DNA from: Lytechinus pictus | Taxonomy: Eukaryota | Assembly (NCBI RefSeq): GCF_037042905.1 | Contig: NC_087247.1 | Span: 26,164,001-26,228,000 of the forward strand | Direction: 5' to 3' | DNA length: 64,000 bases | Notes under the pieces: model-generated | What the model saw: the letters and a program-made list of their open reading frames with translations, nothing else | The model's database searches: none | What the model was told of the DNA's origin: nothing | Part shown: one piece after another, positions 1,056 to 19,700 of the stretch | Layout of the letters: every line of letters starts with the position of its first letter | How positions within the stretch are numbered: the stretch's first letter is position 1 | Position numbers and translations under genes: made by a program

Positions 1056-1061
1056 TAGTGC

Positions 1062-1539
1062 TCTTATGATAACCCTTATGTCTATGTTTCATGAACTACA
1101 TGAGTAGATCCATAAACTTTCTAAGTCATGATGCCAATTCAACAAATACCCACAACACGACCAAAGACCTTAAATGACCTTTGATCTTGGTCATGTGACC
1201 TGAAACATACACAAAATATTCAGAAATACATGTTTACTCTTATATGTCCCAAGTTTCATGAACTAGATATGATGACATTTCAAAAACTTAACCTTGGTTA
1301 AGATTTTGATATTGATTCATTGACCCTAAATGACCTTGGCCATGTGACCTTAAACTCAGGCAGGATATTCAGTAATACTTGATTACCATTATGTCCAAGT
1401 TTCATGAACTAGGTCCATATACTTTTTAAGCTATGATGACATTTCAAAAACTTAACCTTGGTTAAGATTTCAATGTTGACGATGCCACCGCCGTCGGAAA
1501 AGCGGTGCTACAGTCTCGCCTATGCAGGCGAGACAAAAA
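1062..1539 (-). mobile_element. Partial Helentron-associated (HINE/DINE-1-like) element, same family as 6237-7529
   Basis: Shares the internal unit (tgaccttggtcatgtgacctgaaa...aagtttcatgaactag) and the terminal hairpin gtctcgcctatgcaggcgagacaaaaa with 6237-7529. The other end abuts the Tx1-like LINE. Confidence 0.7.
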
Positions 1540-1798
1540 TGAAGATACTTATCAAATAAAGAATATACCTATTAAAAATAGAAGCTTGGAACATTTAATA
1601 CAAAAACATGTGATATCATACAGACTGTGTCGATATCAATTACAAATTGGTTCTATCGACATCTCATGAATAGAGTAGCAAGTGATCAACACTAGTATGG
1701 ATTTGAATTTTTATTTCAAATAGACTTGTCAGCTTTGAAGAATGATGTTCCATTTTTTGTTTCTAAATATTACTGCTGTTTTCTTTCTTCATATTTAC

Positions 1799-2204
1799 AG
1801 GCCTGAATTCAGAAAGGTGGTTTTGAAAACCATAGGTTGAACCCGTGATTTATGCAAAATTCCAGGTATAAATTACGCTTAAATATGCAGTATAAAAAAA
1901 ATGCCCAATGCTGATGCATGCTTTGTCAGTGCGCCAAAATGACGCCTGTTGCCATTTTATTAATGAGTTCACTGTTCTGAAGAGTGGACTCATTACTTCA
2001 AAACAGGAGACTCATTAATAAATAGCATGCTTAACCATGGCAAAAGGTGTCAATTTGGCGCACTGTGATAAAAGCGTGCATCAGCATTAAACATTTTTTT
2101 AAAATTATATGTGGTAAATAAGCATAATTCATACAGGAAATCTGCATAAACCATGGGTTTAACCGATGGTTTTAAAAACAAAACCACCTTTGTGAATTTG
2201 GACC
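1799..2204. mobile_element. MITE with imperfect terminal inverted repeats
   Basis: aggcctgaattcagaaaggtggtttt ... aaaaccacctttgtgaatttggacct, with mirrored internal arms. A more decayed relative lies at about 30833-31085. Confidence 0.65.
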
Positions 2205-2238
2205 TCAATGTCCAACAGAGGTAAATCAGAGTACATAC

Positions 2239-5200
2239 CTTAACATTGTTTGGTACAGAAAAGGGATGATTTTAGAAGAAACCCGGGCAGTTTCTCTCAA
2301 GTCTATGATAGCTAGTCTCTGTGATTTTCCACAATAATCTAGAGGGTCTTTGGGAACTGGTGCTTCCTCAGAGCCAATCGCTATTTCTACACTGCTGACT
2401 GGTGCCACTCCATAGATATGCAACAGTTCTGCTAGAGGAACTAGGTGGCTGTGCCTACGTATGATACGATCTGCTTTCTGTGATCAAGGTAGTAATACAA
2501 ATCATTCAGTTTCCTATTGCTGTCATCTGACCAAAACATTTCGCAATCACCATAACCCCCCTGCTAAGCCTCCTACTGGTATTGCGCAATACATGTGCTC
2601 ATATACTAATACATTCAGTATTCCACTCCTCTTCCATCATTCCATGTATATTGCCTGTTGAGATGTATTTTAGGTAAGTTCAGGCAGATTTATAAAGAAG
2701 TATTGAACATTTTGCTTGGAATGGAAACCAGGGTCCCATTTCATAAAAGTTGCTATGATAGCAACTCTTGCTTGAATGTCAACTTTCATTGGAATAGCCA
2801 ATCAGGAAGCAGCATTTTCACTGTCATGATAATTGAGATTCTAGTAATAGTTGCTCTCATAGCAACTTTTTATGACATGAGTTCCAGATCTCAATTAATC
2901 AAGTGACAGTTTAGAGGACCTTGGAGTAATCCAACAACTGATCAATTATCCTTCCTAAGAGCAATTTCAGGGCTCTTCATTAGTCCTTGCATTGATAGTA
3001 ATATAGGGAATGGTGATTCCAAAACAATGGGAAATGCCACTAAAAAGATATATTTACCGGTAACATGATTCTTGCTAAAAGACATATCTCAGACTATGGT
3101 TAGGGGTTTTAATTACAGTATCACTTCATTTTTGTAATTTCAATGTTCAGGTAGTAGTGTGATATAATTCTCATTATCAAGTCTTTACAATTATTGTGAT
3201 CGACTCTAAAGGGATAAACTTTTGAAATTTTTTTGGATAGAATGAGAGGTGCACTGTGTCTCTTCATCATGTGAAATCAACAGTACCTGCAATTTTAGAT
3301 GAAAGGGAAGACATAGACTATCTTTTAAAAGACATAAAAACATTCCAGCTTCACCATACACCGTGCCTGGGAGCATCCAGCGTTAAAGAGCTCTGGTGAT
3401 TTCTTTATGACCTACAAGATTGGAACTACGATTGAATTATCGGCTGAATTCTTGATTTTATTTCCAATCTTGGGGACAAAAAAAACAATCAAGTTAACAC
3501 TCAGTGGATGCTTCTGGCTGGACTGGATCAAAGTCCCCCAAAACTGGGTTCAATAAGCAGATGCTGCATCACATGTTACATGTCATATAAGATTTTACTT
3601 ACCAAGACATCAAAGACTCGAACAATCTTCAAACCAGCACTTTTTCCAAGCTCATGAGACAGCAATTCAGCATCATACACAACCTGCATATTGGAAAAGT
3701 AAGGCCAACTTCAATCAGACTTGTGCAATATCAGTGCCTAGAAACTTTTGAAATATGATGTTTATAAAAATACATATTATTAATCATATTCTTTTCAAGA
3801 TATAAATGTTAAATGCATGCCACAAAAAGGTCAAATTTTAACAAATTGATAAAGATTAAAAGTTAACTTTAAATAACATTATGGTAGTTTTGATGAAAAA
3901 CTTGATTTTGATTGACTCAGTGTTGAATCATGTTTCTATTACCCAAAGTGGTAAGGTTACTATTAATGCCTCAATGGTAAGGAAAAGTACATGTAAATTT
4001 ACGATAAATTGATCATGCAAATAAACTTGGAGTAAAAAAAACCTACCTCTTCTGCATTAAACAAGTGAAGTATTTTTTTAAAGAGTGTTATCTGTAAAAG
4101 CTGCAGTCATGAAGCCAAACAAACAGCAAAAGGAACAAGAGTTTACGCAATCATCAGCTTAAATTACTGTCTCATAATGAAGAGCTAGCTGTCGCTATTT
4201 ACCTTTAGAATTGAGTCATTATTAAGAAACTGTCCAACAGAGTTAATAATGGCCCACTTGTGAATGTTATCTGGTATCCCACCAGCTATCTTCGTTCCAG
4301 AAGGTACTGCCCGGTCAGACCTATTGGAGAGAGCATCCACGTCAATGGCATAGGTTTCTCCTTCCCAGAAGTGAACCAGAAGCCAGCCATTTAAGCTAGA
4401 GATGCCAATGATTGGTCGCATGTAACCCGAGAGTTTTCCCATCAAGAGCTTGTCAAAGAAACCACACTCCTAGAAAAGAATAACAGCATGTTTACAAATC
4501 TGTAATTCACAATAGTTTTAGCAATGGGACAAACATTACACGATTGATTAAATGAAAATAATGTATGAATCAATTCATTCAATAGGATAGGATAGAGGGA
4601 AGTTTTATTTCAAAATCTTGATACAAGAAAGGGCACAAACTGCTACCATTATGATTAGTTATGATCACAATAGCCTAACCTTACTTTATTGATCTTAATT
4701 ATTTTTTTTAACTTTCCAATGGACTTTACTACTCCTTTATATCAATAAATCACTGTTTTCGCTCTATATTTTGTATGATGAAATGTCTCTTGCATTTATT
4801 TTTATAAACATGTAGATAACACAATTTCTGTATTGTGACATTTGACGAGATTTAAAACAAAGATTGTATACTCTTATTGTTTGATTTCATCAGCTTATCT
4901 TCATAGAGCAATTATGGAAATAAAAAAGTTATAAACATACAACAAAAACCTGTGTTCTACATAGTGAAAGTAATCATAACATCCTGTACTGATCATGGAG
5001 CCATAGTATTACCTTTACAATTGTCACCAGGCAATGTGTTGGTTCACTTTTCACGGACGTCACACCTTCCAGTGATGATACTCTAGGAAGCTGATGTTCA
5101 TATACTCTGTTTGCTAGTCTACTCTCCAAAGTCCAGGAACCACCAACCTCTTGATCTACTGATGACTGTGTGCAAGATGCCAGTTCCTGAGTTGATGAAT

Positions 5201-5987
5201 GTCTATCACTGATCGCTGGTGAACTGCAACCAGCTGAAGATGAAGATACATTCTCAGTGATGTCCAAAGGTGATGCAGTAGCACCCAGAACTTCAGAATC
5301 AACAAGGTTTTCTGCACTAAGCTGACCTTGATATCCTGAAGGGTTCACACTAGTTGTAGAGGATGTTTTACTCAAACCAATGTCATGTTTCTCCGTTTCA
5401 GAATGGATACACTCAGAGGCTGGTTCCAGTGATGAATGTTCCACATCACTATGCAGAGCTTCATCTTCTACTAAGGACACACAGTTCCCTGTTATGTTAA
5501 AAACATCCTTCTGGCTGTGAAGAGAAGCCATGAATTCTTCAAAGTTGTGACCCAGAGTGACAAAAACAGGGTTCTCTAAAGTGTTGATCTTAGAATGGAG
5601 CTCACGTCCGTCATTGATACCTCCATACACAAGCAAAGCTACATCAGCAATAGCTGAATAAAAGAAATCTACAACAACCTCCTGAGCAGTTCTGGTTCTG
5701 TCTGATTTTAGTTCAGTCTTTGTAAAAGTGACCGTAAAAAGAGACTCAAATTTGTGGAGGAATCTTTTCAAGTTTGCGTCTTTCTCTGATGGTTTTGCAT
5801 CATTAGGACCCAAGCACACAATATTTGTTCCTTGGCAGCAGGTCTTCTCTATCACCTCGACTAGCTTACTCAATGCCCTCCTTTCTTCAGGTATTTTTTT
5901 CAAATCCTTAATGATGCTATCAAGACCACTAATGATAAACTGAATATGGTTAGGTAGATTGTCTTGGGTATTTTGGTACCCATCCAT
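2239..5987 (-). CDS. Gene A (3'-partial): Egalitarian/EXD1-like protein with winged-helix-like repeats and a degenerate DEDDy 3'-5' exonuclease domain; paralog of gene B
   Basis: GT-AG exons 5987-5013 (ATG at 5987; acceptor tattcctatacag puts the exon start at 6129), 4469-4203, 3683-3603 and 2477-2239, with phases 0,0,0,2, join into one open frame. Motifs GWLLVHFWEG, FLNNDSILK/VVYD, VRVFDVL and LRETAR..IPFLYQTML align with gene B exons 2-4. No further exon was found inside the window. Confidence 0.85.
2731..2885. mobile_element. Short (~150 bp) MITE of a family repeated at about 21228-21377, 28675-28831, 33870-34012, 34288-34428 and 62187-62325
   Basis: TIR-like ends gggtcccatttcataaaagttgctatga / tcatagcaactttttatgacatgagttcc and a central ccaatca. 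Confidence 0.6.
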
Positions 5988-6236
5988 TATAAATGACACC
6001 TAGATCTATGTCTCAAAGGCTAAATTAAAGCTTCAAAGCACTGGATGTACCATGTAACGTTAGATTTCTGTTTGTCTTTCCATTAATTATTTGTCTACAT
6101 CCGGTATCTGCTCAAACTTTTTTTTGGTCCTGTATAGGAATAAACAATAGAAAATCAAAATTCTGAATTGATTATTGATGCTACAAGTTAAAACTTTGAA
6201 AGACTTCCATATGTCCCCTCTAGGCCTACTAATTGA

Positions 6237-7529
6237 AACAAGTGGAATGCCTCTGGCGGTCTCACCTGCATCACGCGATTCAATATAGCAGCAGTGCTGA
6301 CTTTGAAAACTACTATAAAATAATTATTCACAAAAAACACCATTCATATAATGATACAATACTACGTTCATTGATATTTGACCTTGATCATGTGACCTAA
6401 AACTCGTCAGTGATACTTGATTACCCCTATATCCACATTTTATACACTATATCTATAAACTTTGAAAATTGTGAATTAAATGACCTTTGACTTTGGTCAT
6501 GTGACCTGAAATTCGCATGAGATGTTCAGTGATACTTGACGACTCTTATGTCCAAGTTTTATGAACTAGACCAATATACTTACATAGTTATGACGGTAAT
6601 TCAACAAATACCTCCAACATGGCCAATGTCCATTGACCTTTGACCTTGGTCATGTGACCTGAAACTCGCACAAGATGTTCAGTGATACTTGGTTACTCTT
6701 ATGTCCACGTTTTATGAACTAGACCAATACACTTACAGAGATATGATGGTAATTCAACAAATACCCCCAACATGGCCAAAGTTCATTGACCCTAAATAAC
6801 TTTTGACCTTGGTCATGTTACGTGAAACTCATGCAGGATGTTCAGTAATACTTGATTAACCTTATGTCCAAGTTTCATGAACTAGGTCCATATATTTTCT
6901 AAGTTATGATGACATTTAAAAAACTTAACCTTAGGTTAAGATTTTGATATTGATTCCCCCAACATGGTCTAAGTTCATTGACCCTAAATGACCTTGGTCA
7001 TGTGACCTGAAATGTGCACAGGATGTTTAGTGATACTTGATTACTCTTATGTAGACCAATATACTTTCAAAGTTATGATGGTAATTCAACAAATACCCCC
7101 AATTTCGACAAAGTTCATTGACCCTAAATGACCTTGGTCATGTGACCTGAAATGTGCACAGGATGTTCAGTAACATACTTGATTAACCTTATGTTCAAGT
7201 TTCATGAACTAGGTCCATATATTTTCTAAGTTATGATGACATTTCAAAAACTTAACCTTAGGTTAAGATTTTGATGTTGATATCCCCCAACATGGTCTAA
7301 GTTCATTGACCCTAAATGACCTTTGACCTTGGTCATGTGACATGAAACTCAGGCAGGATGTTTAGTAATACTTGATCAACCTTATGGCCAAGTTTCATGA
7401 ACTAGGTCCATATACTTTCTAAGTTATGCTGTCATTTCAAAAACTTAACCTTCGGTTAAGATTTGGTGTTGACGCCGCCGCTGGAAAAGCGGCGCCTAGT
7501 CTCACTCTGCTATGCAGGTGAGACAAAAA
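6237..7529 (-). mobile_element. Helentron-associated non-autonomous element (HINE/DINE-1-like) with an internal tandem array
   Basis: Subterminal inverted repeats gtctcacctgcat (6259-6271) and atgcaggtgagac (7512-7524), a terminal hairpin, T-rich ends on the minus strand, no TSD, and about 7 internal 150-190 bp subunits. Confidence 0.7.
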
Positions 7530-7617
7530 TTCTATAACAAATCCCCCTAAATTTTCATATTTTTTTTTCCACTTTGAGGGTCTACTTCTGGTTGGCCTAG
7601 GATTCAAACCTCTGTTT

Positions 7618-8884
7618 CCCAGGGGGGGGGGGGGGGTTACCATTGACGAGTGGATACCATGCGTGACAAAAAAAAACATGTAAAAAGGATCTCTTTTTTA
7701 AGATAGGGCACGTTACGTATGTAACATAATAAGGGTGTCAAAAACACTAAAATATTGAAGGGTATATATTTCGCTAGGAAACTATACATGTTTACGGTTC
7801 AAATTGCGAGGGTATAAAAAAGACTAAAATACTCCGGGGGGGGGGGGGGGGGCAGTCTAATGTATTGCTGTACACATACATGACCAAATTATTTCCAAAC
7901 ACCCCCTAAACAAGTTTTTGTTTTTAGTGGGCTTTATTTACACATTTTGGCCCCTAAACAAGTTGTCGCCAGAATATGACCCTGGGGAAAAAGCTTGGTG
8001 AAAAAACATACCCTAAAATATTGAAAAAAGGGTATATATTTCACTAGGAAACTATACATGTTTACGGTTTAATTTGCGAGGGTATAAAAAAGACTAAAAT
8101 ACTTTAGGGGGGGGGCCAGTCAAATGTATTGCTGTACACATGCGTGACCAAATTATTTCCAAACACCCCCTAAACAAGTTTTTTCTCTGTGTGTTTTTCA
8201 GCAAAATAACACCCTAAACAAGTTTTTCGTGGGCTTTATTTACACATATTGGCCCTTAAACAAGTTGTTGCCAGAATATGACCCTGGGCAAAAAGCTTGG
8301 TGAAAAAACATATCCTAAACACGTTTGGCCAATCCTTAAAAAAACATACCCTAAATACGTTTTACCCCGCGATTGACCATTGATCAGTCTTTCAAAACCA
8401 CCCTTTTTCTTGAAAATCTGTTTATTTATACCCTTAACGAGTGCACGCACGGCCCGCATCCAAAACTGAAAACACACCCCTTTAAACACATTTTTTTGGG
8501 GGTCACACATGTGTACAGCAATATATTTGACTGGCCCCCCCCCCCCCCCCGGGAAAATACTTTATAAAGAATGTACTTTTTGCCCCAACACACCGTGTGT
8601 TTAGGGTCCGATTTGAGCGAGGTGTGTGGGCCGTGTAAAGCCGACGTCCATGATCTCGTCCGTAACGTACAATTAAAATATCGTACTTGTTTAGGGGGTC
8701 AATTCAAGGAATACTCGGGTAGGCCAACCGTTTTGTTTCCAATTCTTGTAAAGGGTAGGGTTTCACTCTCCAATACTTGTTAAGGGGTGAATTTTCAGAA
8801 CAATGAAAATACTTGTTTAGGGTGCTTTTCGAAACCCCATGGTCACGCATGGTATCCACTCGTCAATGGAGGTGGTCCCCCGGA
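7618..8884. mobile_element. Non-autonomous DNA transposon with CCCGG/poly-G termini, containing a nested related element
   Basis: Outer TIRs ccattgacgagtggataccatgcgtgac / gtcacgcatggtatccactcgtcaatgg. The inner element 7834-8553 has its own TIRs and is flanked by aaaatact on both sides. Confidence 0.75.
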
Positions 8885-9377
8885 CTCTTACCCTTACTCA
8901 CCGAGCTAGCCGAAATTGTTGAAAGCCATACGTGGGTTTCACAGTGATTAGCCCATATTATTACGACATAGTCATGATAGTCTCTAGTCTAGTCTCCAAC
9001 ATGTCCAAGAGTGTATGTAGGGGATTTACTTTTTTGACTAAATAAACCAAGGCCATTGGGAATCGCACACACTCAATAATTTGACTGAATAAAATATTGG
9101 TATGTATCCACTTTTCCTTCCTAAATCAATTCACAAATAACCGTCTCAATATTTTTGTTTTCAATTTTAGTGGAGGATGGACATATGGAAGTCTTGCCTG
9201 TAATAAAAAAAAGGTTCCTTCACTCAGTTCACTACTACTCACTACCACTGCCAGGGGAATTATATAGGCCTACATACTATAACTTATAAGCTATTATAAA
9301 TTGAACAGACTTTGATTTAAAGTTTGAACCACAATGACAAGGCACATTGCAACAAAGTTACAAACATTAAACATCAC

Positions 9378-10441
9378 CTGGTTCATCTGTTCATGTGATT
9401 GGCTGGTTCTAAATCTAAGTGAATTTTATCTTCGCTGACTTTACTCCAGCCTGGTACTAACTGGTGGAACTGCTGCTGGTTGTGTTTGACAATCTTCTTC
9501 GCTACCCAAAGCTTAAATTAAAGTTCGAAGTTGAACATACCGTATCGTATTTATGTTTACATGATCATTGCATTGATCATGCACACACCGTGCAAAAACA
9601 AAATGTTCCGTGTAGACTGTAGTATCTTCTTTGGCACCAGCGCAAGTAGACTGACCCATTATAAAATACAAGGTAATATTCGGAGTTCTAAAAGACTCAT
9701 AAGTTATTTTTTTTTAACCAAAATGTATGCTTGATTGAAAATTTATATCAAATAATTGTGCCCATAATTATAAAACAATAATACTTATATAATTAAAAAA
9801 TAAGCAAGCATTTTTTTAAATATAAAATACCTTCTACCCCGGCTTCTACCTAAAGTAAAAATGAATTCGTCCGGGGATTCCCCACAAAACATATGGGCCC
9901 GTATTCTGATAGCAGGTTTAACTTAAACTCGGGTTTAAAGTTGTGGTTTAAGTATGGGAAGCCAAAAGTATCAAAATTTTTATTAAGTTGTATGTTTCTT
10001 ATGTTTACTGTGCTCTTTCCTGATTCATCAATGGTGAAGACAATCATCTATTTATACTTCCTAGACAATTATGAATGATTTGAGATCCAAATGAGCTAAA
10101 GTATAATATCTCTACTGTCAGTGATTTATGTAACAATTGGCCTCCCATACTTAAACCACAACTTTAAACCTGAGTTTAAGTTAAACCTGCTATCAGAATA
10201 CGGGCCATGGTATTTTTCTCGTATTCGGCGCGCTCAACTTGAATACAACGTGCGTGAGAGTCGAGGCGGCTGCTCTAGCTGATCAACGATATGATAGGCC
10301 TGCGCTGCCTGCGTAGGCCTTAATTTAGGTCAATTTTGCATTGTAGTCGGATCTGTGATTGTTTTGAAGCACGGTCGTACTCATTGTGATTTGTGGTCCT
10401 AAGTTGAAGAGACAGCAACTGCAGAAAGCAACTGATTTCAG
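9378..10441. promoter_or_regulatory. Candidate bidirectional promoter region and non-coding first exons of genes A and B
   Basis: Both first coding exons start at splice acceptors (6129 minus, 14142 plus), so upstream UTR exons must lie between them. Candidate donors are cag/gtgatg at 9378 (minus) and cag/gtttgt at 10441 (plus). CpG-richer patches lie near 9500-9660 and 10220-10400. Confidence 0.35.
9896..10206. mobile_element. Young MITE (PIF/Harbinger-like) with ~64 bp TIRs
   Basis: 9896-9959 is a near-perfect inverted copy of 10143-10206 (ggcccgtattctgatagcaggtttaacttaaactc...). It is flanked by atg on both sides, a possible 3 bp TSD. Confidence 0.85.
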
Positions 10442-10978
10442 GTTTGTCATGACTTTACTGCTACATACCACTGAGCTGAGCTGAAGTCAAGATCAGGATT
10501 AGATTAAAAATGGTATAAAAAAATGAATCTAGATACTTGGCTTTGCCTTGCCTTGGCTTTGGCAGCATACAGTCAGCTGAGGAAGCTATTTTACTTTTAC
10601 TTTAGAATCAACTGGGATGATGAATAAAGTAATAAAGTAATTAAGTTCTGTATTTTATAATATTGTTTTTGATTAATGTCAACAACAAATAGATCTATTC
10701 TGACACTGCTTATCATTTGCAGTGCCAGCTAGATATACTGATTACTGGGTATGGTGAGTGCAGAGAGGCTGAGACTTGAGAATGACATTGTCAGTGATGG
10801 TTGCATTGCATTGTTGAAATAATATTTTGAATTTATGTCTCATGCCCTCTTAGTAACACTGAAGCAGAACTGAGACCCCAAAATGATGGGCTTATTAGGA
10901 ATGGGGAGTTGTTGATTGCCTTTTTAATCGCGCTCTTTGGATCTGGATGTATAGGCCTACGTTACCTACACCACTCAC

Positions 10979-11712
10979 CAGTGTTGAGTCTGCATGGGCC
11001 GGCTCACCCGAGGACAAGGCGGACCCATGAGGACAAGGCCGGAAGGGTTGAGGCCAGACCGAGGCCGAATATTTCAATACAACAAATGTGCATAAATAAA
11101 TTGCATGCGCGCAGCTCACGTTATTGTTGTTGATTGTGTGGTGTTGCCAAATTATCGTTGCAACAATTACCAGGGGATTGTTATTTAAATTTTTTAATTT
11201 CACAATAAACAAATAAGAATAAAATAAAACTAAATGTTGATAAATCTATTTACACTGGTTACAAAAAATGTTGAACGTAAATCTTAAAATGAGAATACCA
11301 AGAATTTGACGTAATGGCGCATGTGCAAAACTTTTTTTTTTACAGTACTAGTAAGCGCACGTGCATTGCAAAGTCCAGTCGCCGTCACATCAATGTCAGT
11401 GCAGCATGCATGCAGTGCAGCTGCGCTGCAGCCTGCATGAATTGGCTTTGACATCAAGAACAAAATAGAATGACAAAAATAAGAAAGATAGGCGTACTCA
11501 TACAGGTGGATGGGCAAACTCGACAGTCGACTCTCTCTCTGTCAGTTTCAATAATATTTTAGAGAAACTGACAACAGTCAGCATTTGCACACCCTAAAAT
11601 TCTCCCAGCCTTGACCCGGCCTCGACGGGCCTTGACCCGAGGACGATGCCGGGCGTTAACCTCCATCCTCGAGGCCCAAGACGATTTTGCGGCCTCGAGA
11701 CCCACAACACTG
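10979..11712. mobile_element. hAT-like non-autonomous element
   Basis: Termini cagtgttg ... caacactg with GC-rich subterminal repeats (gaggcc/ggcctc). The TSD is not cleanly preserved. Confidence 0.55.
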
Positions 11713-13475
11713 GTATACACTACGTGCTGGACCGATAGGTGTAAGTGCAGCGGCTGCCTATATTATAATTAAATCTTATTAAAAAAGAAATATATGCGCC
11801 AATCAAAATGATCTTATCATATCATGGAAAGACTTCCATATGACCCGTCCACTTTCTAACAAAATTCTACGAAAACCCCCCTATGTTTAATGTTTTTAGG
11901 ATTTTCAGTCGTGAAGGGCATACATGGGCGGAAATCTGTCCCCAAAGGTAGGGGGGACCAGGGACTGGAAACTTTGACAAGCAAAAAAAAAATTAAGCTG
12001 AGAATGATCGACAGACAAAAAAAAAAGTTGCCAATGATTTCCATGCAAAAGGAAGGTAGAAAGAATTTTGATCTTTCATATAACTTTTGGAAAAAAATAA
12101 TTAGAATTGGTACAGTGAGAATCTCCCATCCACCCCCCTCCAAAAAATGAATTATCTGATGACCATGCCAATATTGAAATTGCATCCATTCCATCTATTA
12201 TGTTGCTTCTTTTGGGTTGTTCATCACATAATAAACTTTTTTCTCTCTCTCTCCCGAGCTACTTTTGTCTTATGCCCCTTTACCTCACCCCTTCCTAGAT
12301 ATCCCACTACATATATGATACTATATAGTACAGTAGTCTTTAAAATTTATCAGAATAAAAGTGATTACAAAATTGTATGATAATCATAATAATAAATGAT
12401 AAAATAATAATAATATCTTATTTTACCCAGGGTGGCCACTTAAGTTCCTAAAACTATTCTCCCATTTGGTCCTGCTGAACATGATAATTTTGTTATCCCT
12501 TCAGCATTATTCATCATAACATTCTCCCACCAGAAAATATAAGTTACCATGCATGAGTGTTTCCAAAAGAAAACAAGATGCAAAGGAATTGATACAGGAT
12601 AGATTAGAGTAATTTTGAAATGTTTTTTTTTAACCTTTAATTTGTGCTTGGCAGTGTTCACCTTAAATTCATGCATTTTGACAATATCCTTCAAATATTT
12701 TACACATGGTGGCTTGTCTCATGTAAAGGCGAGAAAAGTGCATGAAATTTTGTGTGTATGAAGCTCTGTCAGAAACAGGCATTTAGGTCATTTAGGTTTC
12801 AGTCACAACTCAGAGCGGCGACCGACCAATTAGTAGCCTGCTCGGGTGGTGCTGGAATTTAGGTATCACCCAACGATTTTGTAGAAGCCGAGCGGCTGTG
12901 AAGACCAGTGTCTGAGTAGTGCCCTATCTATTATCCATTACTCAAGGCCAAATCTGGGTCAAATCAGGGGAACTTTTCTGTTTTGCATCCGAGTAGTGAT
13001 CGGCTGACGACCCATCGATTCCTGGGCGGTCTCCCACCGGCCACCAGCCTATTTTTAAGTAATTGCCCAACCAATCTTGAATTCGACACTGGCGACCAGT
13101 CGGTGACCGCTCGACAGCTTTGATCCAACAATTGACCTACTTCGTTCGACGACCAACTGGGCACCGAGCATGAAAAGTGAGCAGGCACCGCCAGAATTTT
13201 AACTCACGGTGATGCAGTATATGCAGACACTCAGTACATTTGTTATGCACTTTTGCTTTTGATACAAGTCATTGAATTATAATGACAAATGCTCAACTGG
13301 GAAATTTGTGTTGGTTTTAGCAAAATCATATTTGGATTGGGGAAATTGAAATTTGAAGATGGTGGACAGAGCCTTTCTCATGTACATGTAGGTACAATGT
13401 TTATTTCATCTTTTCTTCCCTTTTCCGTAGGTTTTATTTGGTATTTCCATACATGTACCAAAGCAAGGATGTTTC

Positions 13476-13950
13476 TACAGTTCGAGTAAAAAAAAATTGA
13501 CACCTCACAAATCCTAATTTAAGGAAAAGGTCATGAACGCATAATCATTATATATGGCTGGAAAGAGTATCTTCTCTAAAATAGTTTTATACCATATTTA
13601 TGTGGTATGTCTTCACACTTGGATAATCAGTAGGTATTGTTTGCGCCAAAGTAAGTTATGACTGCAAATCTGCAATGAATGAATCCAGATGTCAATGGTG
13701 TCATAATCTTGCCTGAAGGAAGTTCAGCAGAGACCTTGTTTCCTGTTGATCTGTTATGCGTAAGTCACACGGCCACTTACGGTAGCTGTAGATGCTTATG
13801 GATATAAAATTATTATTATTATCTATAAAATTATATTATTATGAAATTATTTTGGAGAAGATACTCTTTCAGGCCACATATATGTTCATGACATATTTTT
13901 CCATATTAGGGATTTGTGAGGTGTCAAGTTTATTTTTGACTCAAACGTTA
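13476..13950. mobile_element. Tc1/mariner-like non-autonomous element
   Basis: Inverted ends tacagttcgagtaaaaaaaaattgacacctcacaaatcctaat / attagggatttgtgaggtgtcaagtttatttttgactcaaacgtta. Confidence 0.55.
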
Positions 13951-14190
13951 GGGGAGATCGGTGTTGTATTATTAATAGCAATAAATTGAGGGCAGTATTG
14001 CATAAATTTTTTTTACAGGCGTTAAAGAAAATTACAATGTTTCAACTTACCCCGATCTCCCCTATAATGAATTGCAGAATGTAGGACAGGCTGCCATGAG
14101 CATTCCACCTGTTATAACAATCTACTTTATCTTATTCACAGATCTGATGTGTTTGCTGTAAAGTGTATTTGAAGAATTTCATCACACAAC

Positions 14191-16788
14191 ATGGAAGTTG
14201 CAGACTACCAGTCAGCCTTTGAAGATTACCTGCGCAACAAGGAGACCTTCAAGTGCTCCAAGAAAGAAATGGATTCCTTCCTGCTAACTCTACCCATTAC
14301 TAAAGAGATCAGGAATCATTTGAAGAAAACCACTTTGGAAAATCCTCCTACAACTCTTGAGGTTCTTGGCCAGACAGTATCTCTTTCCAGTAGCTATATC
14401 AAGGGTATAAAAGCAATACAGAACATTCTGAAGAAAGACAAGAGTGAGAATATAAAGTTGAGCTGTATCATCCAGCGTATTCGTGACTTGATGGGCAGTA
14501 CCCATAACAAGCTGGTTTGGGAGATTTCAACGATTCTTGACATTTCAGGTGAAAAGAAGGTTTCTCTAGGGATTTGTAAGAAGAAGCAACGCTTATGTGA
14601 TGCAAAAGTGAAGATGCATCATTATCTCCTGATGGAAGGATTGCAAGATGTTATTGCCAGTCTTACAGAAAATGGACCAAATTCTGTAGAGGAACTGTGG
14701 AAATCTTGTAAAAGCTCATCTGCTCCACTTGCTATGTCAAAAGTGGGCATGAGTCACAGAAGATTTGAGGCGACACTGATGAGCTATCCTGAAGCTTTCC
14801 AAGTTGAAGATGGTAAAATGTTCTTAAATGAAAACCCGCAAATCACATACTCTGTGATCCTTAGCCATATGCAGTCAGGTAAACTTAAGCTCAGAGATCA
14901 CCTGTATAACCAAGGTGCACTTCTGAAGAATGAGCTGTTCCATTCAGCCCCACATCTCCTTAATAGAGCAGAAATGCTTGCAATGGGAGAAGGCATGGAA
15001 ATGTTCAACTTTACTCTGCAGTCGCTGAGTAATGACTTTCTTATCATAATTCCTCACATGCTAGTTGTTGTCAAAGGAACATCCCAGATACAGGACAACC
15101 CCTTTGTAAGTGCCATCTCCAAGATCAAAGGTTTCATCAGAATTGCCCAAGGTTCATCTCAAGCTCAGAATAATCCTTTGGTGAGTGCGGTGTCCAGGTT
15201 CAAAGATTTTGTCAGAGGCAAAAATACTGGAGACATCCCTACAATGAGTCAACTTTTGGTATTCGTCAATGATACACTGAATCCGAGAGAGCAAGCAGCT
15301 GTTGGAAGCACTAGCCACAAGCTCAGAGAAACAATCACTGCATATCCAGACCACTTTGCCGTGAATAATGACAGGGTGTTTGTCAAGTCGGATGATGTCA
15401 TTCTTCCAGATATGAATTCAAAAGTTGCACATAATACTTCAGTTACCATAGAAGATCAAGCAGGTGATAGAAATGGATGTTTGCCAGATCAGTGCACTGA
15501 ATCCTCTGAAGCTCTGGCACACTCTAATGCTCTTGATCAAGAAATAGAGTCACTTCAAATTGGTATTGATGTTAGTAGCTCTGTTCTAAGTACTGAAGAT
15601 TCTGAATTGTCCCCAAACTCTGATGATTCTAGTCTGGATGCTGGTTCTCTTGGCACAGAAAATGTATGTACACTATGTACAAGCACTTTAAGCAGCTCCA
15701 TCCACAACACTGAAAAACCAGGATGCTCAGAAAACTTAGGTTCTGTTGATGATCATGAAACAAATTTGCCACATTCAGATAACATAGAATGCAGCTCAGT
15801 GCAGTATGCTGAAGATAGTAGAGACACTCCTGATCGAGACCATGGTTCACTGATCACGGATGATGCTGTATCTAGCACTGGACAACTGGAAGGCACATCA
15901 AACTCTGATGCCCTTGATCAGAAGACAGGATCACCTTGCACTGATGATGGTGTTTATAGCTCTGTTCAAAATGTTGAACTTCCTGAAGACTCGGCAGACT
16001 CTGACCTGTGTGATCAAGAAACTGATTCATCCCATACTAATAATGAGGCATGTACATGTAGCTCTGTCCAAAACGTGGAACTCCCTGGCGGCATGCAAGT
16101 CTCTGAAACTTCTGATGGAGATACTGATTTGTTGTGCAATGATGATAGTTTTCATACTCAGATCACAGACCAACGTGAAGACTCTGTAAACTCTGCCTCT
16201 CTTGATAAAGAAAAACATGTTCCAGAAAATGATAATGATGTCTCCAACTCTATTCAGTCCACTGGTCAGTCTTCTGCAGACCTCAGACCCTCAGACCTTG
16301 TTGATCATGGCCCAGCATCACCTAGAAGAGGTAACAATCAATGTAGCACTGATCATATCACTGGCCATCCTCTAAACTTGGTAAATTCCAATGGCAATAA
16401 AGACTTACCATGCCCCAGCAATGATGTAAGTAGCTTTGTTAAAAAGACTGAATGTTCTGATGATGTCCCAAACTTGGACACTCTTGATATTGACACTGAT
16501 GTAACATACTCTGCTCATGATATTGCACGCTACTCTCAGAAGACCAAAGATTTTGAAGATTTCTCATTTTCAAATAAGAGATCTTCACTTCAGACCATTA
16601 ATGACGAACTTGATGGTAGCTTGGATCAGTCTATGTCTTTAGGGCAAGATGAAGTTGAATCTCTTGGGAGTGACATCATATCAGACTCCGAGTCTCTTCA
16701 TTCTGGGATGAGTAATGAAATAGGGAACCTGGAACCAGCTAGTGCACCTGCAGAAACAGAAGGTCAGGATACAGTTACTGTTCTTCAG
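14191..16788 (+). CDS. Gene B first coding exon: winged-helix-like repeats (aa ~1-400) and acidic Ser/Asp-rich repeat region
   Basis: 869 aa ORF preceded by the acceptor cttattcacag (exon start 14142) and ending at the donor cag/gtgagc (16788). Recurrent G-x-S/T-x3-L/F-x3-L-x2-YP-x2-F-x-V pattern. Confidence 0.9.
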
Positions 16789-19700
16789 GTGAGCCACTGA
16801 TGAATCTATTCCCAAACTTCATCATAAATATATATGTTTTTGTTTGTTCAATACTTCCGCAACTACCTTTATTATGCTCCATTACTGTAGAGTGCTTAGA
16901 GATTCCTGATATAGTATTAAAGTGTTAAGTGCTATATAAGCAAGTATATTTATTATTATCATTATTAAAGTTACATTTAAGCTCCTCATGGATGTAATGA
17001 CAAAGAGCAAGTTGAAGGAGCTTTGGCTCTTAAGCAAATTATTATTTGACAGAGAATGGGAGGTTTATTATAATCTTTTTTAATCCTGTCCTGAAGTGAG
17101 ACAATTTAATGTATTCTATTGCATTTTGGTAATGTGTACAATCATTTTTGTATGTTCTCTCACACATTCTGCAGGACTTCAACTATTTTGGTGAACTGAT
17201 CAAAGATTTTCTAAGCAAGTCAATCTATCCGATACTTTCTGTGTCTTTATTTGATGGTTGGTTGATTGTTGGTCTCTGGGATGGCCCTACGTTTGCTATC
17301 TCCTTCACCTTGACATCTGGTGATCAGAAGAAGGTGCTTGGACCGTCAAAAAGGACCGCATTGGATTTCTTGACCAGTGGGTCAATCTTGAAGGTACTTT
17401 GTGTTCTCAATTGTGAACATGTGTAATTTTGAAATGTAAAATGTAAGATTGTCATTAACTCCATCGGGTATGTTTGCCAGTCAGTTAACTTTAAGTGTTT
17501 TATGTCTATCTTGTGAGGGCAATCTCCTATTCTTGGTAGCCACTGGTTGTACTTGAACATTTTGAGCTAGGATGTAGGACGCTACCAGTGAGAGAGAGAT
17601 ATCTCTGGTTGCCAGAATGTAAGAGGAGGAAGCTATCAGTATAATGGGTTCTCATTTCTGACATATCAAAAAAATAGAAATGTACAATCATGGAACGGGT
17701 AAAGAGATATGCAAGTAGTAATAATTTCATGCTTATGTTTCTTAATTGTAGGAAGATCTCTACCTGTTTTCCTTCTGTTGCATTTGAACTTCCTCTTTGA
17801 TTCCTCATTTTTACTGTAGGTTGTGTTTGGTAAGAAGCTTCTTACAGAGGTCAGTGATACTATGGGAATCAAGATGATCAATGTGTTTGATTTGCAGGTA
17901 AGTTTGTAAATAATATAATGTAGTAAGAGTATAAGAGACAGAAAAATCGCATTATCATAAAAGCATAAAAGGTAAGGAATCATTTTTGCAGCAGCAAAAA
18001 GGTTATAAAAGCTGAAATGTTTGTGGTAATTTTACTAGCTGATACCACGAGAATATCCACTTCTGTATAATGGTGCTGTACCGAAAACAATTGGAATCCC
18101 AAATTTAATCAAGAACTGCAGGTGAACGGAAGCTAAGTAGAAATTTGTATTAAAAATCATCTAGGCTCTTGTGTTGAATAAGCATGATATATTCTGTCTA
18201 AATAAGACTAAAATAGCCATGGATCAGTAAATTGCAATCTCAGTATACACATTTTTTCCTTATTTTGCAGGAGGCAGAACGTCTCATAAAAAACAATGCC
18301 AAGAAATCCCAGACATTGCCGGAGTCTCTGAATTTTTTTGGCATCGATCCTTGTCCTGTTGTGGAGGTGTGCATAGGAACCATTCAAGCTCCTAGCTCTG
18401 GTGAGGTATACAGCAAGGAAGCTATCCTCAAGCTCAAGGAAACAGCAAGATGGACCATGAAGCAAGTCCCATATCTCTATCAAAAGATGTTAGGGTGAGT
18501 CCAGATCTGTGGTCTAAGTTTTTGTACATTTTGATGCCATTCAAACAAGTACTCAAAATGATACTAGAACTCATGCAACTGAAGATGGAACTGCCATAAA
18601 TCAACAACTACATATGTGACCAGCCACCCCCGAACCAACAATAAGTCACCAAGGAATTACTATTCGGTCATCAAAAAGCAAAAATAAGAAAATTAGCTTA
18701 TAAATCTGAAAGAGTAATTCTTTATACTGTCGAAATGTGAAGTTGTAAATTTGAATAAAATACAAGATAAAAGGTTTTTTTTTGACAGTTGACACCTTTT
18801 TTTTTTCCGGACAACTGGGAAGTGTCACCGAGATTGCACATCTCATGATTGATTAAACCCGAGACTTCAAACAATCTTTTACCTTATTCATGAAGCACTC
18901 ACTGAATTTCTTCTCCATTCAATAAAGTACTCGAGTTGGTTATTATTGATCAATTATTGACAAGTCATATATCATGTTAACCCTTGGGATGGGTTTTTTA
19001 AAACTTGATGAAATATCTCAAAATTCATTTTGGCCGATTAATTGTTGGTTTTGGGGTGGCTGTTTATATTTGTTTAGATAAGTACATGAAAATGAATAAT
19101 TTCCCTTTCCTAACACTAAAGCAGATCACATACATTGTGTCCCTTGAACATGGTCTTACCAGTGCTCAAAGGTGATGTTATTAACCAGCTTGTCAGTCTT
19201 CATTGGCTGTTAATTCCATATTGTCACAGAATGATGTTGCCACATCAGATCACCGATGTGAGCCAACTATACTGTAGAGAAGTTGAAGATCTACCTTCAA
19301 CATCAAGCAAGACAAAAGAACCTCCCTACGGTACTACAATATCTGGGACCAGTAGCCAGAATCCCTCTGCATCTTCAGCATCAGTGAGTGTTTCTCAAGA
19401 TTATTCCCTTGTGACATCATCTACAACATCGCAGAAGCTTGATCCAGTATCGTCAGCGAAAGAAAAGGCCACTTCTGAGAAGCCTGTGTCGGTTCATAGA
19501 GTGTCATCCACTTCTGATGACTTAGTTGAACCTGAAACTGTGAGTCAAGCCCGGCCGACTAATGGCCTAGTTGATATGGAGGTAACTAGAAAAAAAATTA
19601 TGTTCATGAATAGGACAGTAAAACTTGCATGAGTCAAGTCAGTTTGTCCTGATAAATGGCATTGAATTATGAAAAGAGTGGCTTATTCAAGTTTCACTGT

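What the first reader, a model, noticed from the sequence alone, without database searches (positions are those of the whole stretch)
2239..18494. Head-to-head pair of anciently duplicated Egl/EXD1-like paralogs
Seen: gene A (minus) and gene B (plus) diverge from an ~8 kb spacer and match exon for exon. Each has a large first coding exon ending VTIVK or VTVLQ (phase 0). Next come PIIGISSLNGWLLVHFWEGETYAI..SILK vs PILSVSLFDGWLIVGLWDGPTFAI..SILK (phase 0), VVYD..VRVFDVL vs VVFG..INVFDLQ (phase 0), and LRETAR..IPFLYQTML vs LKETAR..VPYLYQKML (phase 2). Both frames are intact despite strong divergence, implying long-term selection on both. Inference: a co-regulated two-component module, possibly a heterodimer, since related pseudo-nucleases such as EXD1 and Exuperantia dimerise. 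Whether gene A also ends in a Ycf45 ATPase cannot be seen because it leaves the window.
Basis: partly seen in the sequence, partly recalled or inferred. Interest (0 to 1): 0.78.

Follow-up and report, generated by a model that had tools for sequence, protein, structure and literature searches.

The report
Diverged head-to-head Egl-like ATPase paralogs
Two neighbouring sea-urchin genes pointing away from each other are old, still-functional duplicates of one uncharacterised gene (Egalitarian-type RNA-binding parts plus a bacterial-type ATPase), but nothing yet shows that they work as a pair.

Summary
The window is Lytechinus pictus chromosome DNA. Gene A (minus strand) is LOC129257539 and gene B (plus strand) is LOC129257538, both "uncharacterized" in RefSeq. 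Their start codons are 8,203 bp apart.

The two genes match exon for exon, with the same phase at all eight shared introns. A and B are 32% identical over the nuclease-like domain (E 2e-28) and 40% over the ATPase (E 6e-84). They are the only two such ATPase loci in the genome.

Four weak but concordant tests place the exon 2-4 domain in the EXD1/Egalitarian/RRP6 exonuclease fold. The catalytic residues are lost.

Gene A is spliced and transcribed as modelled. Its two domains are under purifying selection (dN/dS 0.2-0.3).

The head-to-head order is kept in L. variegatus and S. purpuratus. Diadema has a single, B-like gene with a different neighbour.

The "co-regulated heterodimer" idea is unsupported. 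The spacer is 8-14 kb, full of repeats and poorly conserved, and the complex prediction gave no verdict. The best reading is an old inverted duplication followed by asymmetric divergence, with A changing faster. The scan had already noted B's architecture on this same window.

The parts
5013..5987 (-). Gene A (LOC129257539) coding exon 1, 975 nt, ends ...VTIVK in phase 0. Isoform X2 starts at the internal ATG at 5531.
   Evidence: Exact threading of P0127 (XP_063952780.1) on the genome. RNA contigs cover 5012-6132. Winged-helix signal is weak only: Pfam E 0.0048 and Atlas 0.85.
5988..6132 (-). Gene A 5' untranslated leader, at least 145 nt.
   Evidence: An RNA contig of run X1 runs unbroken over 5555-6132, and stranded reads fall in the 6000-6199 bin.
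4203..4469 (-). Gene A exon 2, 267 nt, phase 0/0. Start of the exonuclease-like domain (PIIGISS...SILK).
   Evidence: splice joint seen in an RNA contig. 30.5% identical to B exon 2. 74-76% aa identity to S. purpuratus.
3603..3683 (-). Gene A exon 3, 81 nt, phase 0/0 (VVYD...VFDVL).
   Evidence: 42% identical to B exon 3.
2239..2477 (-). Gene A exon 4, 239 nt, ends in phase 2 (...IPFLYQTML). End of the exonuclease-like domain.
   Evidence: 58% identical to B over the last 24 aa.
1..2238 (-). Start of gene A intron 4, which runs on to 5,204 bases before the window's first base. It holds a LINE endonuclease fragment at 188-508. A's remaining six exons lie at G000:C3:26158795-26156095, 26155702-26155494, 26154204-26154049, 26153694-26153472, 26152645-26152589 and 26151215-26150721.
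5988..14190 (.). Spacer of 8,203 bp between the two start codons. Mostly dispersed repeats, with no Rfam family.
   Evidence: Only 14064-14190, just before B's ATG, is well conserved with L. variegatus (95%).
6236..7530 (.). Dispersed repeat of about 1.3 kb inside the spacer, heavily transcribed genome-wide.
   Evidence: 8,454 first-look candidates in the genome at 77-89% identity. RNA depth is 100-1900x against 3-13x on gene A exons.
14191..16788 (+). Gene B (LOC129257538) coding exon 1, 2598 nt. Egalitarian-type winged helices in the first 420 aa or so, then a Ser/Asp-rich stretch. Ends ...VTVLQ in phase 0.
   Evidence: Pfam WH_Egal E 2.8e-9 / 2.2e-10, above the cut-off. Model.
17175..17393 (+). 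Gene B exon 2, 219 nt, phase 0/0 (PILSVS...SILK).
17820..17897 (+). Gene B exon 3, 78 nt, phase 0/0 (VVFG...VFDLQ).
18271..18494 (+). Gene B exon 4, 224 nt, ends in phase 2 (...VPYLYQKML).
19230..19581 (+). Gene B exon 5, 352 nt, Ser/Thr-rich linker.
20781..21074 (+). Gene B exon 6, 294 nt, linker. A has one giant exon (2701 nt) in place of B's exons 5 and 6.
21737..24847 (-). Intact 1036-aa non-LTR retrotransposon ORF (reverse transcriptase) inside gene B intron 6. Not part of the gene.
   Evidence: Pfam RVT_1 E 3.6e-36.
25524..25735 (+). Gene B exon 7, 212 nt. Start of the ATPase module (the matching A exon is 209 nt).
26451..26606 (+). Gene B exon 8, 156 nt (A: 156 nt).
27847..28069 (+). 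Gene B exon 9, 223 nt, Walker A P-loop (A: 223 nt, 47% identical).
28521..28577 (+). Gene B exon 10, 57 nt (A: 57 nt, 62% identical).
29086..29577 (+). Gene B exon 11, 489 nt plus stop. Walker B and the C-terminal part of the SpoIIIAA-like domain (A: 495 nt).
   Evidence: Pfam Spore_III_AA. Model.

Best explanation
A and B are the two products of an old inverted (head-to-head) duplication of a single echinoid gene.

The ancestral gene encoded four parts in order: (i) Egalitarian-type winged-helix modules; (ii) a DEDDy-fold 3'-5' exonuclease-like domain that has lost its catalytic residues, as in EXD1; (iii) a long disordered linker; and (iv) a SpoIIIAA/Ycf45-type P-loop ATPase.

Both copies have stayed functional for at least the age of the Lytechinus-Strongylocentrotus split, and probably since before the Diadema split. 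They have diverged asymmetrically. B keeps the ancestral plan that the single Diadema gene also has. A evolves faster, has a short and poorly conserved N-terminus, and has a 900-aa Lys/Gln/Ser-rich linker with basic clusters.

Shown here: paralogy, identical intron phases, intact frames, purifying selection on both folded domains, transcription and splicing of A, conserved gene order, and only two copies in the genome.

Inferred: each protein acts as an ATP-driven RNA- or RNP-binding factor, with the dead nuclease domain holding RNA as in Egl, EXD1 and Exu, and the ATPase doing the work. The relatives of this ATPase are fused to other nucleic-acid-binding modules: R3H in bacteria and a true exonuclease in one other protein of unknown organism. 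Also inferred: the two copies have split or changed roles rather than forming an obligate pair, and the head-to-head order is a relic of how the duplication happened.
For: Paralogy:
- E 1.7e-28 and 6e-84 between A and B.
- Colinear exon matches inside and beyond the window.
- Exon sizes are A [975, 267, 81, 239, 2701, 209, 156, 223, 57, 495] and B [2598, 219, 78, 224, 352, 294, 212, 156, 223, 57, 489], with identical phases at the eight shared introns.
- These are the only two loci of this ATPase in the genome.

Domains:
- WH_Egal and Spore_III_AA score above the Pfam cut-offs in B. Spore_III_AA and T2SSE score above cut-off in A.
- The exonuclease-like fold is supported by a PDB profile search whose 8 hits are all EXD1, EXOSC10 or Egalitarian. 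It is also supported by the Atlas best hit, 'Exd1 homolog', at 0.91 with 66 of 100 hits in PF01612.
- In Foldseek, the 50 listed best hits are all DEDDy exonuclease domains, with EXD1 first at E 8.9e-4.
- The catalytic positions are replaced.
- All 44 family-invariant ATPase columns, including Walker A and B, are kept in both A and B.

Selection:
- L. pictus against L. variegatus: dN/dS for A is 0.29 (exonuclease-like), 0.30 (ATPase) and 0.70 (N-terminus). For B it is 0.55, 0.21 and 0.38.
- A in L. pictus against S. purpuratus: 0.20 and 0.29.

Expression:
- One RNA contig joins A's exons 4, 3, 2 and 1 at the modelled splice sites with no mismatch. Stranded reads fall on exons only.

Conserved order:
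- L. variegatus spacer is 14.4 kb. S. purpuratus spacer is about 8.5 kb.

Age and asymmetry:
- In the ATPase tree the echinoid clade has 100/100 support and (Diadema+B) has 99/93 and 99/96. A's stem branch is 1.1-1.2 against 0.37 for B. The AU test rejects A+B without Diadema at p 0.031 and 0.024.
- The Diadema gene has B's 11-exon plan and a different upstream neighbour.
- A's N-terminus is not found in S. purpuratus.
Against: - Head-to-head order kept in three species for tens of millions of years could reflect shared regulation rather than inertia. I could not compare expression of the two genes.
- Transcription of B was not tested here.
- The tree that dates the duplication before the Diadema split has A on a long branch next to a long outgroup branch. 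This is the classic setting for long-branch attraction. A later duplication in the camarodont stem would need no loss in Diadema.
- The model of the exonuclease-like domain is weak (pLDDT 54, TM about 0.3), so the fold assignment rests on agreement among weak tests.
- The complex score of 0.44 exceeded the 0.34 mark but failed the control margin, so binding is not excluded.
- No biochemical function is known for any member of the family.
Confidence: 0.85

Rival explanations
1. A and B form a co-regulated two-component module, for example a hetero-oligomeric ATPase ring or a heterodimer through the pseudo-nuclease domains, transcribed divergently from a shared control region.
For: - The divergent order is conserved in L. 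pictus, L. variegatus and S. purpuratus.
- Both copies are kept under purifying selection.
- The ATPase matches the Pfam T2SSE family. From general knowledge, members of that family act as oligomers.
- From the literature, EXD1 and Exu dimerise, and Egl is dimerised on BicD (paper 10.1101/2025.08.03.668247).
Against: - The spacer is 8.2, 14.4 and about 8.5 kb, and is mostly dispersed repeats. Only 127 bp next to B's ATG is well conserved between the two Lytechinus species, and nothing aligns to S. purpuratus.
- Neither ATPase has lost catalytic residues, which often happens to one member of an obligate paralog pair.
- Diadema has one gene only.
- A's N-terminus and linker drift nearly neutrally (dN/dS 0.7) and differ sharply in composition from B's.
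- The complex prediction gave no verdict, so it counts neither way.
Confidence: 0.12
2. Gene A is a decaying duplicate, an expressed pseudogene in the making, and only B is functional.
For: - A has the longer branch.
- A has a higher overall dN/dS, 0.51 against 0.39 for B.
- Its N-terminal winged-helix region is only marginally recognisable and is absent or unrecognisable in S. purpuratus.
- The S. purpuratus RefSeq models omit its first four exons.
Against: - A has an intact 1801-aa frame in L. pictus and an intact 1662-aa frame in L. variegatus. In S. purpuratus the recognisable parts of exons 2-10 are open.
- dN/dS is 0.20-0.30 on its two folded domains over dS up to 0.8.
- All invariant ATPase residues are kept.
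- The mRNA is correctly spliced.
Confidence: 0.03

Closest known systems
Egalitarian (Drosophila Egl / C. elegans EGAL-1), dynein-BicD RNA adaptor
   Same: B carries the Pfam Egalitarian winged-helix domain (PF23713) upstream of a DEDDy-fold exonuclease-like domain. Solved Egl chains are among the sequence and fold matches.
   Different: - Egl keeps the DEDDy catalytic residues. A and B have lost them.
- Egl has no ATPase. A and B end in a SpoIIIAA/Ycf45 ATPase.
- No conserved LC8-type TQT motif was found in A or B.
- A's winged-helix signal is below threshold.
- The urchin genome has a separate Egl-like gene without the ATPase, at C3:19.30 Mb. It looks closer to canonical Egl.
EXD1 (inactive 3'-5' exonuclease-like piRNA factor; PDB 5fiq/5fis)
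   Same: EXD1 is the best hit for the exon 2-4 domain in all three tests: the PDB profile search (E 0.017), Foldseek (E 8.9e-4, probability 0.99) and the protein-language-model search (0.91). It is also catalytically dead, with Leu at the motif II Asp position just as in A and B.
   Different: Identity is about 14% and all the scores are marginal. EXD1 is a small protein of about 240-570 aa with no winged helices and no ATPase. Its Lsm-like N-terminal module (from my own knowledge) was not looked for here.
SpoIIIAA / Ycf45 / R3H-domain ATPases of bacteria, cyanobacteria, algae and plastids (PF19568)
   Same: The C-terminal 380 aa of A and B are 33-40% identical to these proteins. They score above the PF19568 cut-off and share 44 invariant columns, including Walker A and B.
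   Different: - Most of the bacterial hits carry a C-terminal R3H domain (PF01424). A and B have none.
- A and B carry spliceosomal introns and are fused downstream of the Egl-like parts.
- The echinoid clade sits on a very long branch.
P0108, an 897-aa protein from an NCBI contig (organism not given) with a true PF01612 exonuclease domain plus a Spore_III_AA ATPase
   Same: It has the same order of an exonuclease-fold domain followed by the same ATPase family. Its ATPase is 33% identical to those of A and B.
   Different: Its exonuclease domain scores E 2.5e-22 and shows apparent DxE, HD..D and Y...D motifs (by eye). It has no WH_Egal hit. It does not group specifically with the echinoid genes in the tree, so common descent of the fusion is not shown.

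Membership tests
Egalitarian family | Egalitarian winged-helix domain (Pfam PF23713) above the gathering score | tested here: met
   For B: 37.8-41.3 bits against a cut-off of 27, and the own-genome scan hits B exon 1. For A the feature is not met. Exon 1 alone scores 17.8 bits (E 0.0048), the full protein gives no hit, and only an Atlas lead at 0.85 remains.
Egalitarian family | DEDDy 3'-5' exonuclease domain with the five catalytic residues conserved | tested here: not met
   The fold is supported but Pfam PF01612 gives no hit. In alignments with a true exonuclease, motifs I, II and III are replaced: Ser/Gly-x-Ser for DxE, Leu for the motif II Asp, and Glu...Trp/Val for Y...D. The motif I assignment is by eye.
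Egalitarian family | Dynein light chain (LC8) binding motif near the C-terminus, and an N-terminal BicD-binding region | tested here: inconclusive
   No [TVI]Q[TV] motif is conserved across species in A or B. BicD binding cannot be tested from sequence.
EXD1-like inactive exonucleases | DEDDy fold with degenerate catalytic motifs | tested here: met
   EXD1 is the top hit, and the catalytic positions are lost. All scores are weak (E 1e-3 to 2e-2, model pLDDT 54).
EXD1-like inactive exonucleases | Orthology or overall architecture of EXD1 | not tested
   A and B are 1634-1801 aa with extra winged-helix and ATPase modules. No tree against EXD1 was made.
SpoIIIAA/Ycf45 ATPases (PF19568) | Pfam Spore_III_AA above the cut-off, with intact Walker A and Walker B | tested here: met
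   A scores 34.5-38.4 bits and B 35.7 bits against a cut-off of 27. The invariant G-K-T and D(E) columns are shared with 19 bacterial, algal and other homologs.
SpoIIIAA/Ycf45 ATPases (PF19568) | C-terminal R3H nucleic-acid-binding domain, as in most of the bacterial homologs | tested here: not met
   PF01424 is listed for most bacterial hits but is absent from A and B.
Bidirectional-promoter gene pair | Divergent start sites within about 1 kb that share a conserved promoter | tested here: not met
   The ATGs are 8.2 kb apart. A's leader reaches only to about 6132. The spacer varies from 8 to 14 kb, is repeat-rich and is poorly conserved. B's transcription start was not mapped.

The most novel reading that the evidence does not exclude
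A and B assemble into one mixed ATPase ring or dimer that carries two different RNA-binding arms. One arm would be B's Egalitarian-type winged helices and the other A's basic, possibly nuclear, linker. The conserved head-to-head order would then reflect a need for balanced dosage. The pair would be an animal ATP-driven RNP machine built from an Egl-like adaptor and a bacterial-type SpoIIIAA ATPase.
Probability: 0.12. Interest if true: 0.65.

Novelty: new variant of a known kind. Interest (0 to 1): 0.4.

Why it matters
The pair itself is an ordinary outcome of gene duplication. It is nonetheless useful in three ways.

First, it shows that the unusual animal architecture has been kept in two diverging copies under selection. 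The architecture joins Egalitarian/EXD1-like RNA-binding parts to a SpoIIIAA/Ycf45 ATPase. This argues that the fusion is functional and not an annotation chimera.

Second, the two copies give a natural experiment. Comparing what A lost (winged helices) and gained (a basic linker) with B should indicate which parts serve which role.

Third, it corrects the S. purpuratus models of gene A. They start inside exon 5 and are named "myb-like protein Q" or "split ends-like" because of low-complexity sequence.

No paper in the searchable library mentions these loci or the domain combination.

Tried and rejected
- **Complex prediction of the two ATPase domains.** Score 0.44 in all three runs, against controls of 0.26, 0.00 and 0.00. 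The tool's verdict is "no answer", so this is not evidence for or against binding. The alignments I supplied were not used.
- **First AlphaFold model of B's exon 2-4 domain, from 7 sequences.** pLDDT was 36, so it was unusable and was not searched.
- **Second model, of A's domain, from 12 sequences.** pLDDT 54 and pTM 0.47. I used it only for the family identity of the Foldseek hits, not for any structural detail.
- **hhalign of the echinoid domain against P0108's true exonuclease.** Only the motif II region aligned (E 0.0019, probability 14%).
- **hhalign of A's N-terminus against B's.** E 0.0065, probability 6%. It aligns on B's winged helix but is not significant.
- **Pfam on single exons 2-4.** No hit.
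- **Search for A's N-terminal 300 aa in the S. purpuratus spacer.** Nothing beyond the last 54 aa or so of exon 1.
- **Search for an A-type gene in Diadema.** None among annotated proteins and none in the 10-kb flanks of the Diadema gene. The Diadema genomes themselves could not be searched.
- **Rfam on the spacer.** Nothing.
- **Literature.** Nothing on these loci or this fusion.
- **Rejected readings.** An assembly artefact or recent duplication is ruled out by the 32-40% identity. Pseudogenisation of A is ruled out by the intact frames, the low dN/dS on its domains and the spliced RNA.

Full report
**Where we are.** The window is G000:C3:26164001-26228000. The contig length of 82,431,108 bp is the one recorded for the Lytechinus pictus RefSeq protein XP_063952781.1, so the organism is the sea urchin L. 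pictus. Gene A of the finding is LOC129257539 and gene B is LOC129257538. Both are named "uncharacterized protein".

I read both regions and threaded the RefSeq proteins onto the genome to get exact exon limits.
- Gene A is on the minus strand. Its exons in the window are 5987-5013, 4469-4203, 3683-3603 and 2477-2239.
- Gene B is on the plus strand. Its exons are 14191-16788, 17175-17393, 17820-17897, 18271-18494, 19230-19581, 20781-21074, 25524-25735, 26451-26606, 27847-28069, 28521-28577 and 29086-29574, followed by the stop.
- The two start codons are 8,203 bp apart.
- The first exons do not resemble each other detectably, so the exon-for-exon match begins at exon 2.

**Gene A beyond the window.** I fetched 40 kb upstream. 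tblastx against B's downstream exons gave a colinear series of matches. The RefSeq isoform X1 (P0127, 1801 aa) threads exactly onto ten exons. The last six lie at G000:C3:26158795-26156095, 26155702-26155494, 26154204-26154049, 26153694-26153472, 26152645-26152589 and 26151215-26150721.
- These six are a 2701-nt low-complexity exon followed by five exons of a P-loop ATPase. Pfam calls the ATPase Spore_III_AA, T2SSE and AAA.
- Exon sizes are A [975, 267, 81, 239, 2701, 209, 156, 223, 57, 495] and B [2598, 219, 78, 224, 352, 294, 212, 156, 223, 57, 489]. All eight shared introns have the same phase. B has one extra phase-0 intron in the linker.
- BLASTP of A against B gives 32% over 206 aa (E 1.7e-28) for the exon 2-4 domain and 40.5% over 370 aa (E 6e-84) for the ATPase.
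- A six-frame search of the whole genome with B's ATPase finds only these two loci.

**What the domains are.**
- B's first 420 residues hold an Egalitarian winged helix above Pfam's cut-off.
- A's exon 1 gives only sub-threshold signals. Pfam scores E 0.0048. A weak profile alignment falls on B's winged helix. The protein-language-model best hit is a WHD_Egal cluster at 0.85.
- The exon 2-4 domain has no Pfam hit, but four weak tests agree on its fold.
  - A profile of seven echinoid sequences against PDB sequences returns only EXD1, EXOSC10/RRP6 and Egalitarian (E 0.017-0.43).
  - The Atlas search puts "Exd1 homolog" first at 0.91, with 66 of 100 hits in PF01612.
  - An AlphaFold model of A's domain (pLDDT 54) returns DEDDy exonuclease domains for all 50 listed best PDB matches by Foldseek. 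EXD1 is first, followed by EXD2, RRP6, Nibbler, Egalitarian, RNase D and WRN.
  - The motif II region aligns with a true exonuclease.
- In those alignments the catalytic positions are replaced in A, B and the Diadema genes. The domain is therefore EXD1-like, meaning dead, rather than Egl-like. According to the 2026 structure paper, Drosophila Egl keeps all five DEDDy residues.
- The ATPase is 33-40% identical to bacterial R3H/SpoIIIAA proteins and to algal homologs. A and B keep all 44 columns that are invariant across 27 sequences, including Walker A and B.

**Is gene A alive?** Yes.
- In run X1 a 1289-nt contig joins 2239-2477, 3603-3681, 4201-4468 and 5012-5562 without a mismatch. This is the spliced mRNA across exons 4 to 1.
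- Two stranded RNA-seq runs of the same species put reads on the exons only, all in one orientation, at depth 3-13. The introns have depth 0.
- A's frame is intact in L. pictus (1801 aa) and in L. variegatus (1662 aa).
- dN/dS between the two Lytechinus species is as follows:

| Gene | Region | dN/dS |
|---|---|---|
| A | overall | 0.51 |
| A | exonuclease-like domain | 0.29 |
| A | ATPase | 0.30 |
| A | N-terminus | 0.70 |
| A | linker | 0.68 |
| B | overall | 0.39 |
| B | winged helices | 0.38 |
| B | exonuclease-like domain | 0.55 |
| B | ATPase | 0.21 |

- Against S. purpuratus, where dS is 0.5-0.8, A's exonuclease-like exons give 0.20 and its ATPase 0.29.
- Both folded domains of both genes are therefore under purifying selection. 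The N-terminus and linker of A drift almost freely.

**Synteny.**
- In L. variegatus, A (LOC121411387) and B (LOC121411388) are head to head with 14.4 kb between their ATGs.
- In S. purpuratus, B (LOC579939) and A lie head to head on the same record. About 8.5 kb separates B's ATG from the upstream limit of A's recognisable exon 1.
- The S. purpuratus RefSeq models of A start inside exon 5 and are misnamed "myb-like protein Q" and "split ends-like". Conserved exons 2-4 lie upstream of them.
- Only the last 54 aa or so of A's exon 1 are recognisable in S. purpuratus.
- Diadema antillarum and D. setosum each have one annotated gene of this family. It has B's 11-exon plan and a DUF498 gene as its upstream neighbour. 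In L. pictus the DUF498 gene sits 17 Mb away on the same chromosome.

**Age of the duplication.**
- A maximum-likelihood tree of the ATPase domain, rooted with bacterial and algal homologs, gives one echinoid clade (100/100). Within it A is sister to (Diadema + B), with support of 99/93.
- Dropping the longest outgroups gives 99/96.
- The AU test rejects A+B to the exclusion of Diadema at p 0.031 and 0.024.
- Taken at face value, the duplication predates the Diadema-camarodont split and Diadema lost A.
- The caveat is real. A's stem branch is three times B's and sits next to the long outgroup branch, which is the textbook case of long-branch attraction. A duplication in the camarodont stem needs no loss.
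- Either way the duplication is older than the Lytechinus-Strongylocentrotus split.

**Co-regulation and heterodimer.**
- The spacer is not a bidirectional promoter. It is 8-14 kb long and contains a dispersed repeat of about 1.3 kb (6236-7530) with thousands of genomic relatives and very high RNA depth.
- It has no Rfam family.
- It aligns with L. variegatus only in patches of 68-88% identity. The exception is 127 bp just before B's ATG at 95%. Nothing aligns to S. purpuratus.
- The complex prediction for the two ATPase domains returned no verdict and is not used as evidence.
The anatomy does not favour it.

**Context.**
- The urchin genome holds a third Egl-like gene at C3:19.30 Mb (L014:3168-5897). 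It has a strong WH_Egal hit (E 4.6e-14). Its first exon ends at the same "...ILK|V" position as exon 2 of A and B. No ATPase lies within 15 kb downstream.
- A and B are thus a separate, ATPase-bearing branch of the Egl-like genes. In the databases searched it is found only in echinoids.
- Outside animals, one 897-aa protein (P0108) combines a true PF01612 exonuclease with the same ATPase family. The bacterial homologs carry an R3H domain instead.
- This ATPase is therefore repeatedly joined to nucleic-acid-binding modules. That is the basis for inferring an RNA-directed, ATP-driven role.

**Verdict.** This is a real, conserved pair of old paralogs that are both alive, with asymmetric divergence. 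The pairing as a functional module is unproven. The scan had already noted B's architecture (s1-323333, s1-323436) on this same window.

Noticed in passing
window 6236-7530: A dispersed repeat of about 1.3 kb with 8,454 first-look candidates in the genome (copies 77-89% identical). RNA depth is 100-1900x in stranded runs, almost all in one orientation. It has no Rfam family and no long ORF. It looks like a highly transcribed non-coding repeat family.
   Followed up: partly
window 21737-24847 (-): An intact 1036-aa non-LTR retrotransposon ORF (Pfam RVT_1, E 3.6e-36) inside intron 6 of gene B. A LINE endonuclease fragment (Exo_endo_phos) lies at 188-508 (-) in intron 4 of gene A.
   Followed up: partly
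L014:3168-5897 (G000:C3:19304168-19306897, +): A third Egalitarian-like gene. Its first exon is a 909-aa open frame with WH_Egal (E 4.6e-14) and several winged-helix-like repeats. It ends with the start of an exonuclease-like domain at the same '...ILK|V' intron position as A and B. No Ycf45 ATPase was found within 15 kb downstream. It is probably the urchin's canonical Egl-like gene.
   Followed up: partly
L009:1234-9014 (S. purpuratus, AAGJ06000006.1 around 23.861-23.869 Mb): The S. purpuratus RefSeq models of gene A (XP_030828292.1 'split ends-like' and XP_030828293.1 'myb-like protein Q') start inside exon 5. They omit exons 2-4, which lie upstream and are conserved (69-76% aa identity, dN/dS 0.20). 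The N-terminal 270 aa or so seen in Lytechinus could not be found there.
   Followed up: yes
P0108 (897 aa, NCBI contig of 5,306 bp) and P0137 (1230 aa, Logan contig): P0108 joins a bona fide 3'-5' exonuclease domain (PF01612, E 2.5e-22) to the same SpoIIIAA/Ycf45 ATPase family. P0137 has the ATPase and, by eye only, an exonuclease-like stretch. The organisms are unknown. The exonuclease+ATPase fusion may therefore be older than echinoids.
   Followed up: partly
window 14191-29574 vs P0001: The RefSeq protein XP_054751864.1 of gene B, from an earlier L. pictus annotation, differs from this assembly's gene B at 2.2% of residues. This is probably allelic polymorphism between individuals.
   Followed up: no
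S. purpuratus LOC115918221 (P0128/P0130, on a 3.04-Mb contig): A second S. purpuratus locus encodes a protein at least 90% identical to B (LOC579939). It is likely an unmerged haplotype scaffold rather than a further paralog.
   Followed up: no
window 54100-54650 and about 2.6-3.0 kb before the window's start: Related tandem-repeat arrays of short units lie on both sides of the gene pair (tblastx). They have the look of a dispersed minisatellite family.
   Followed up: no
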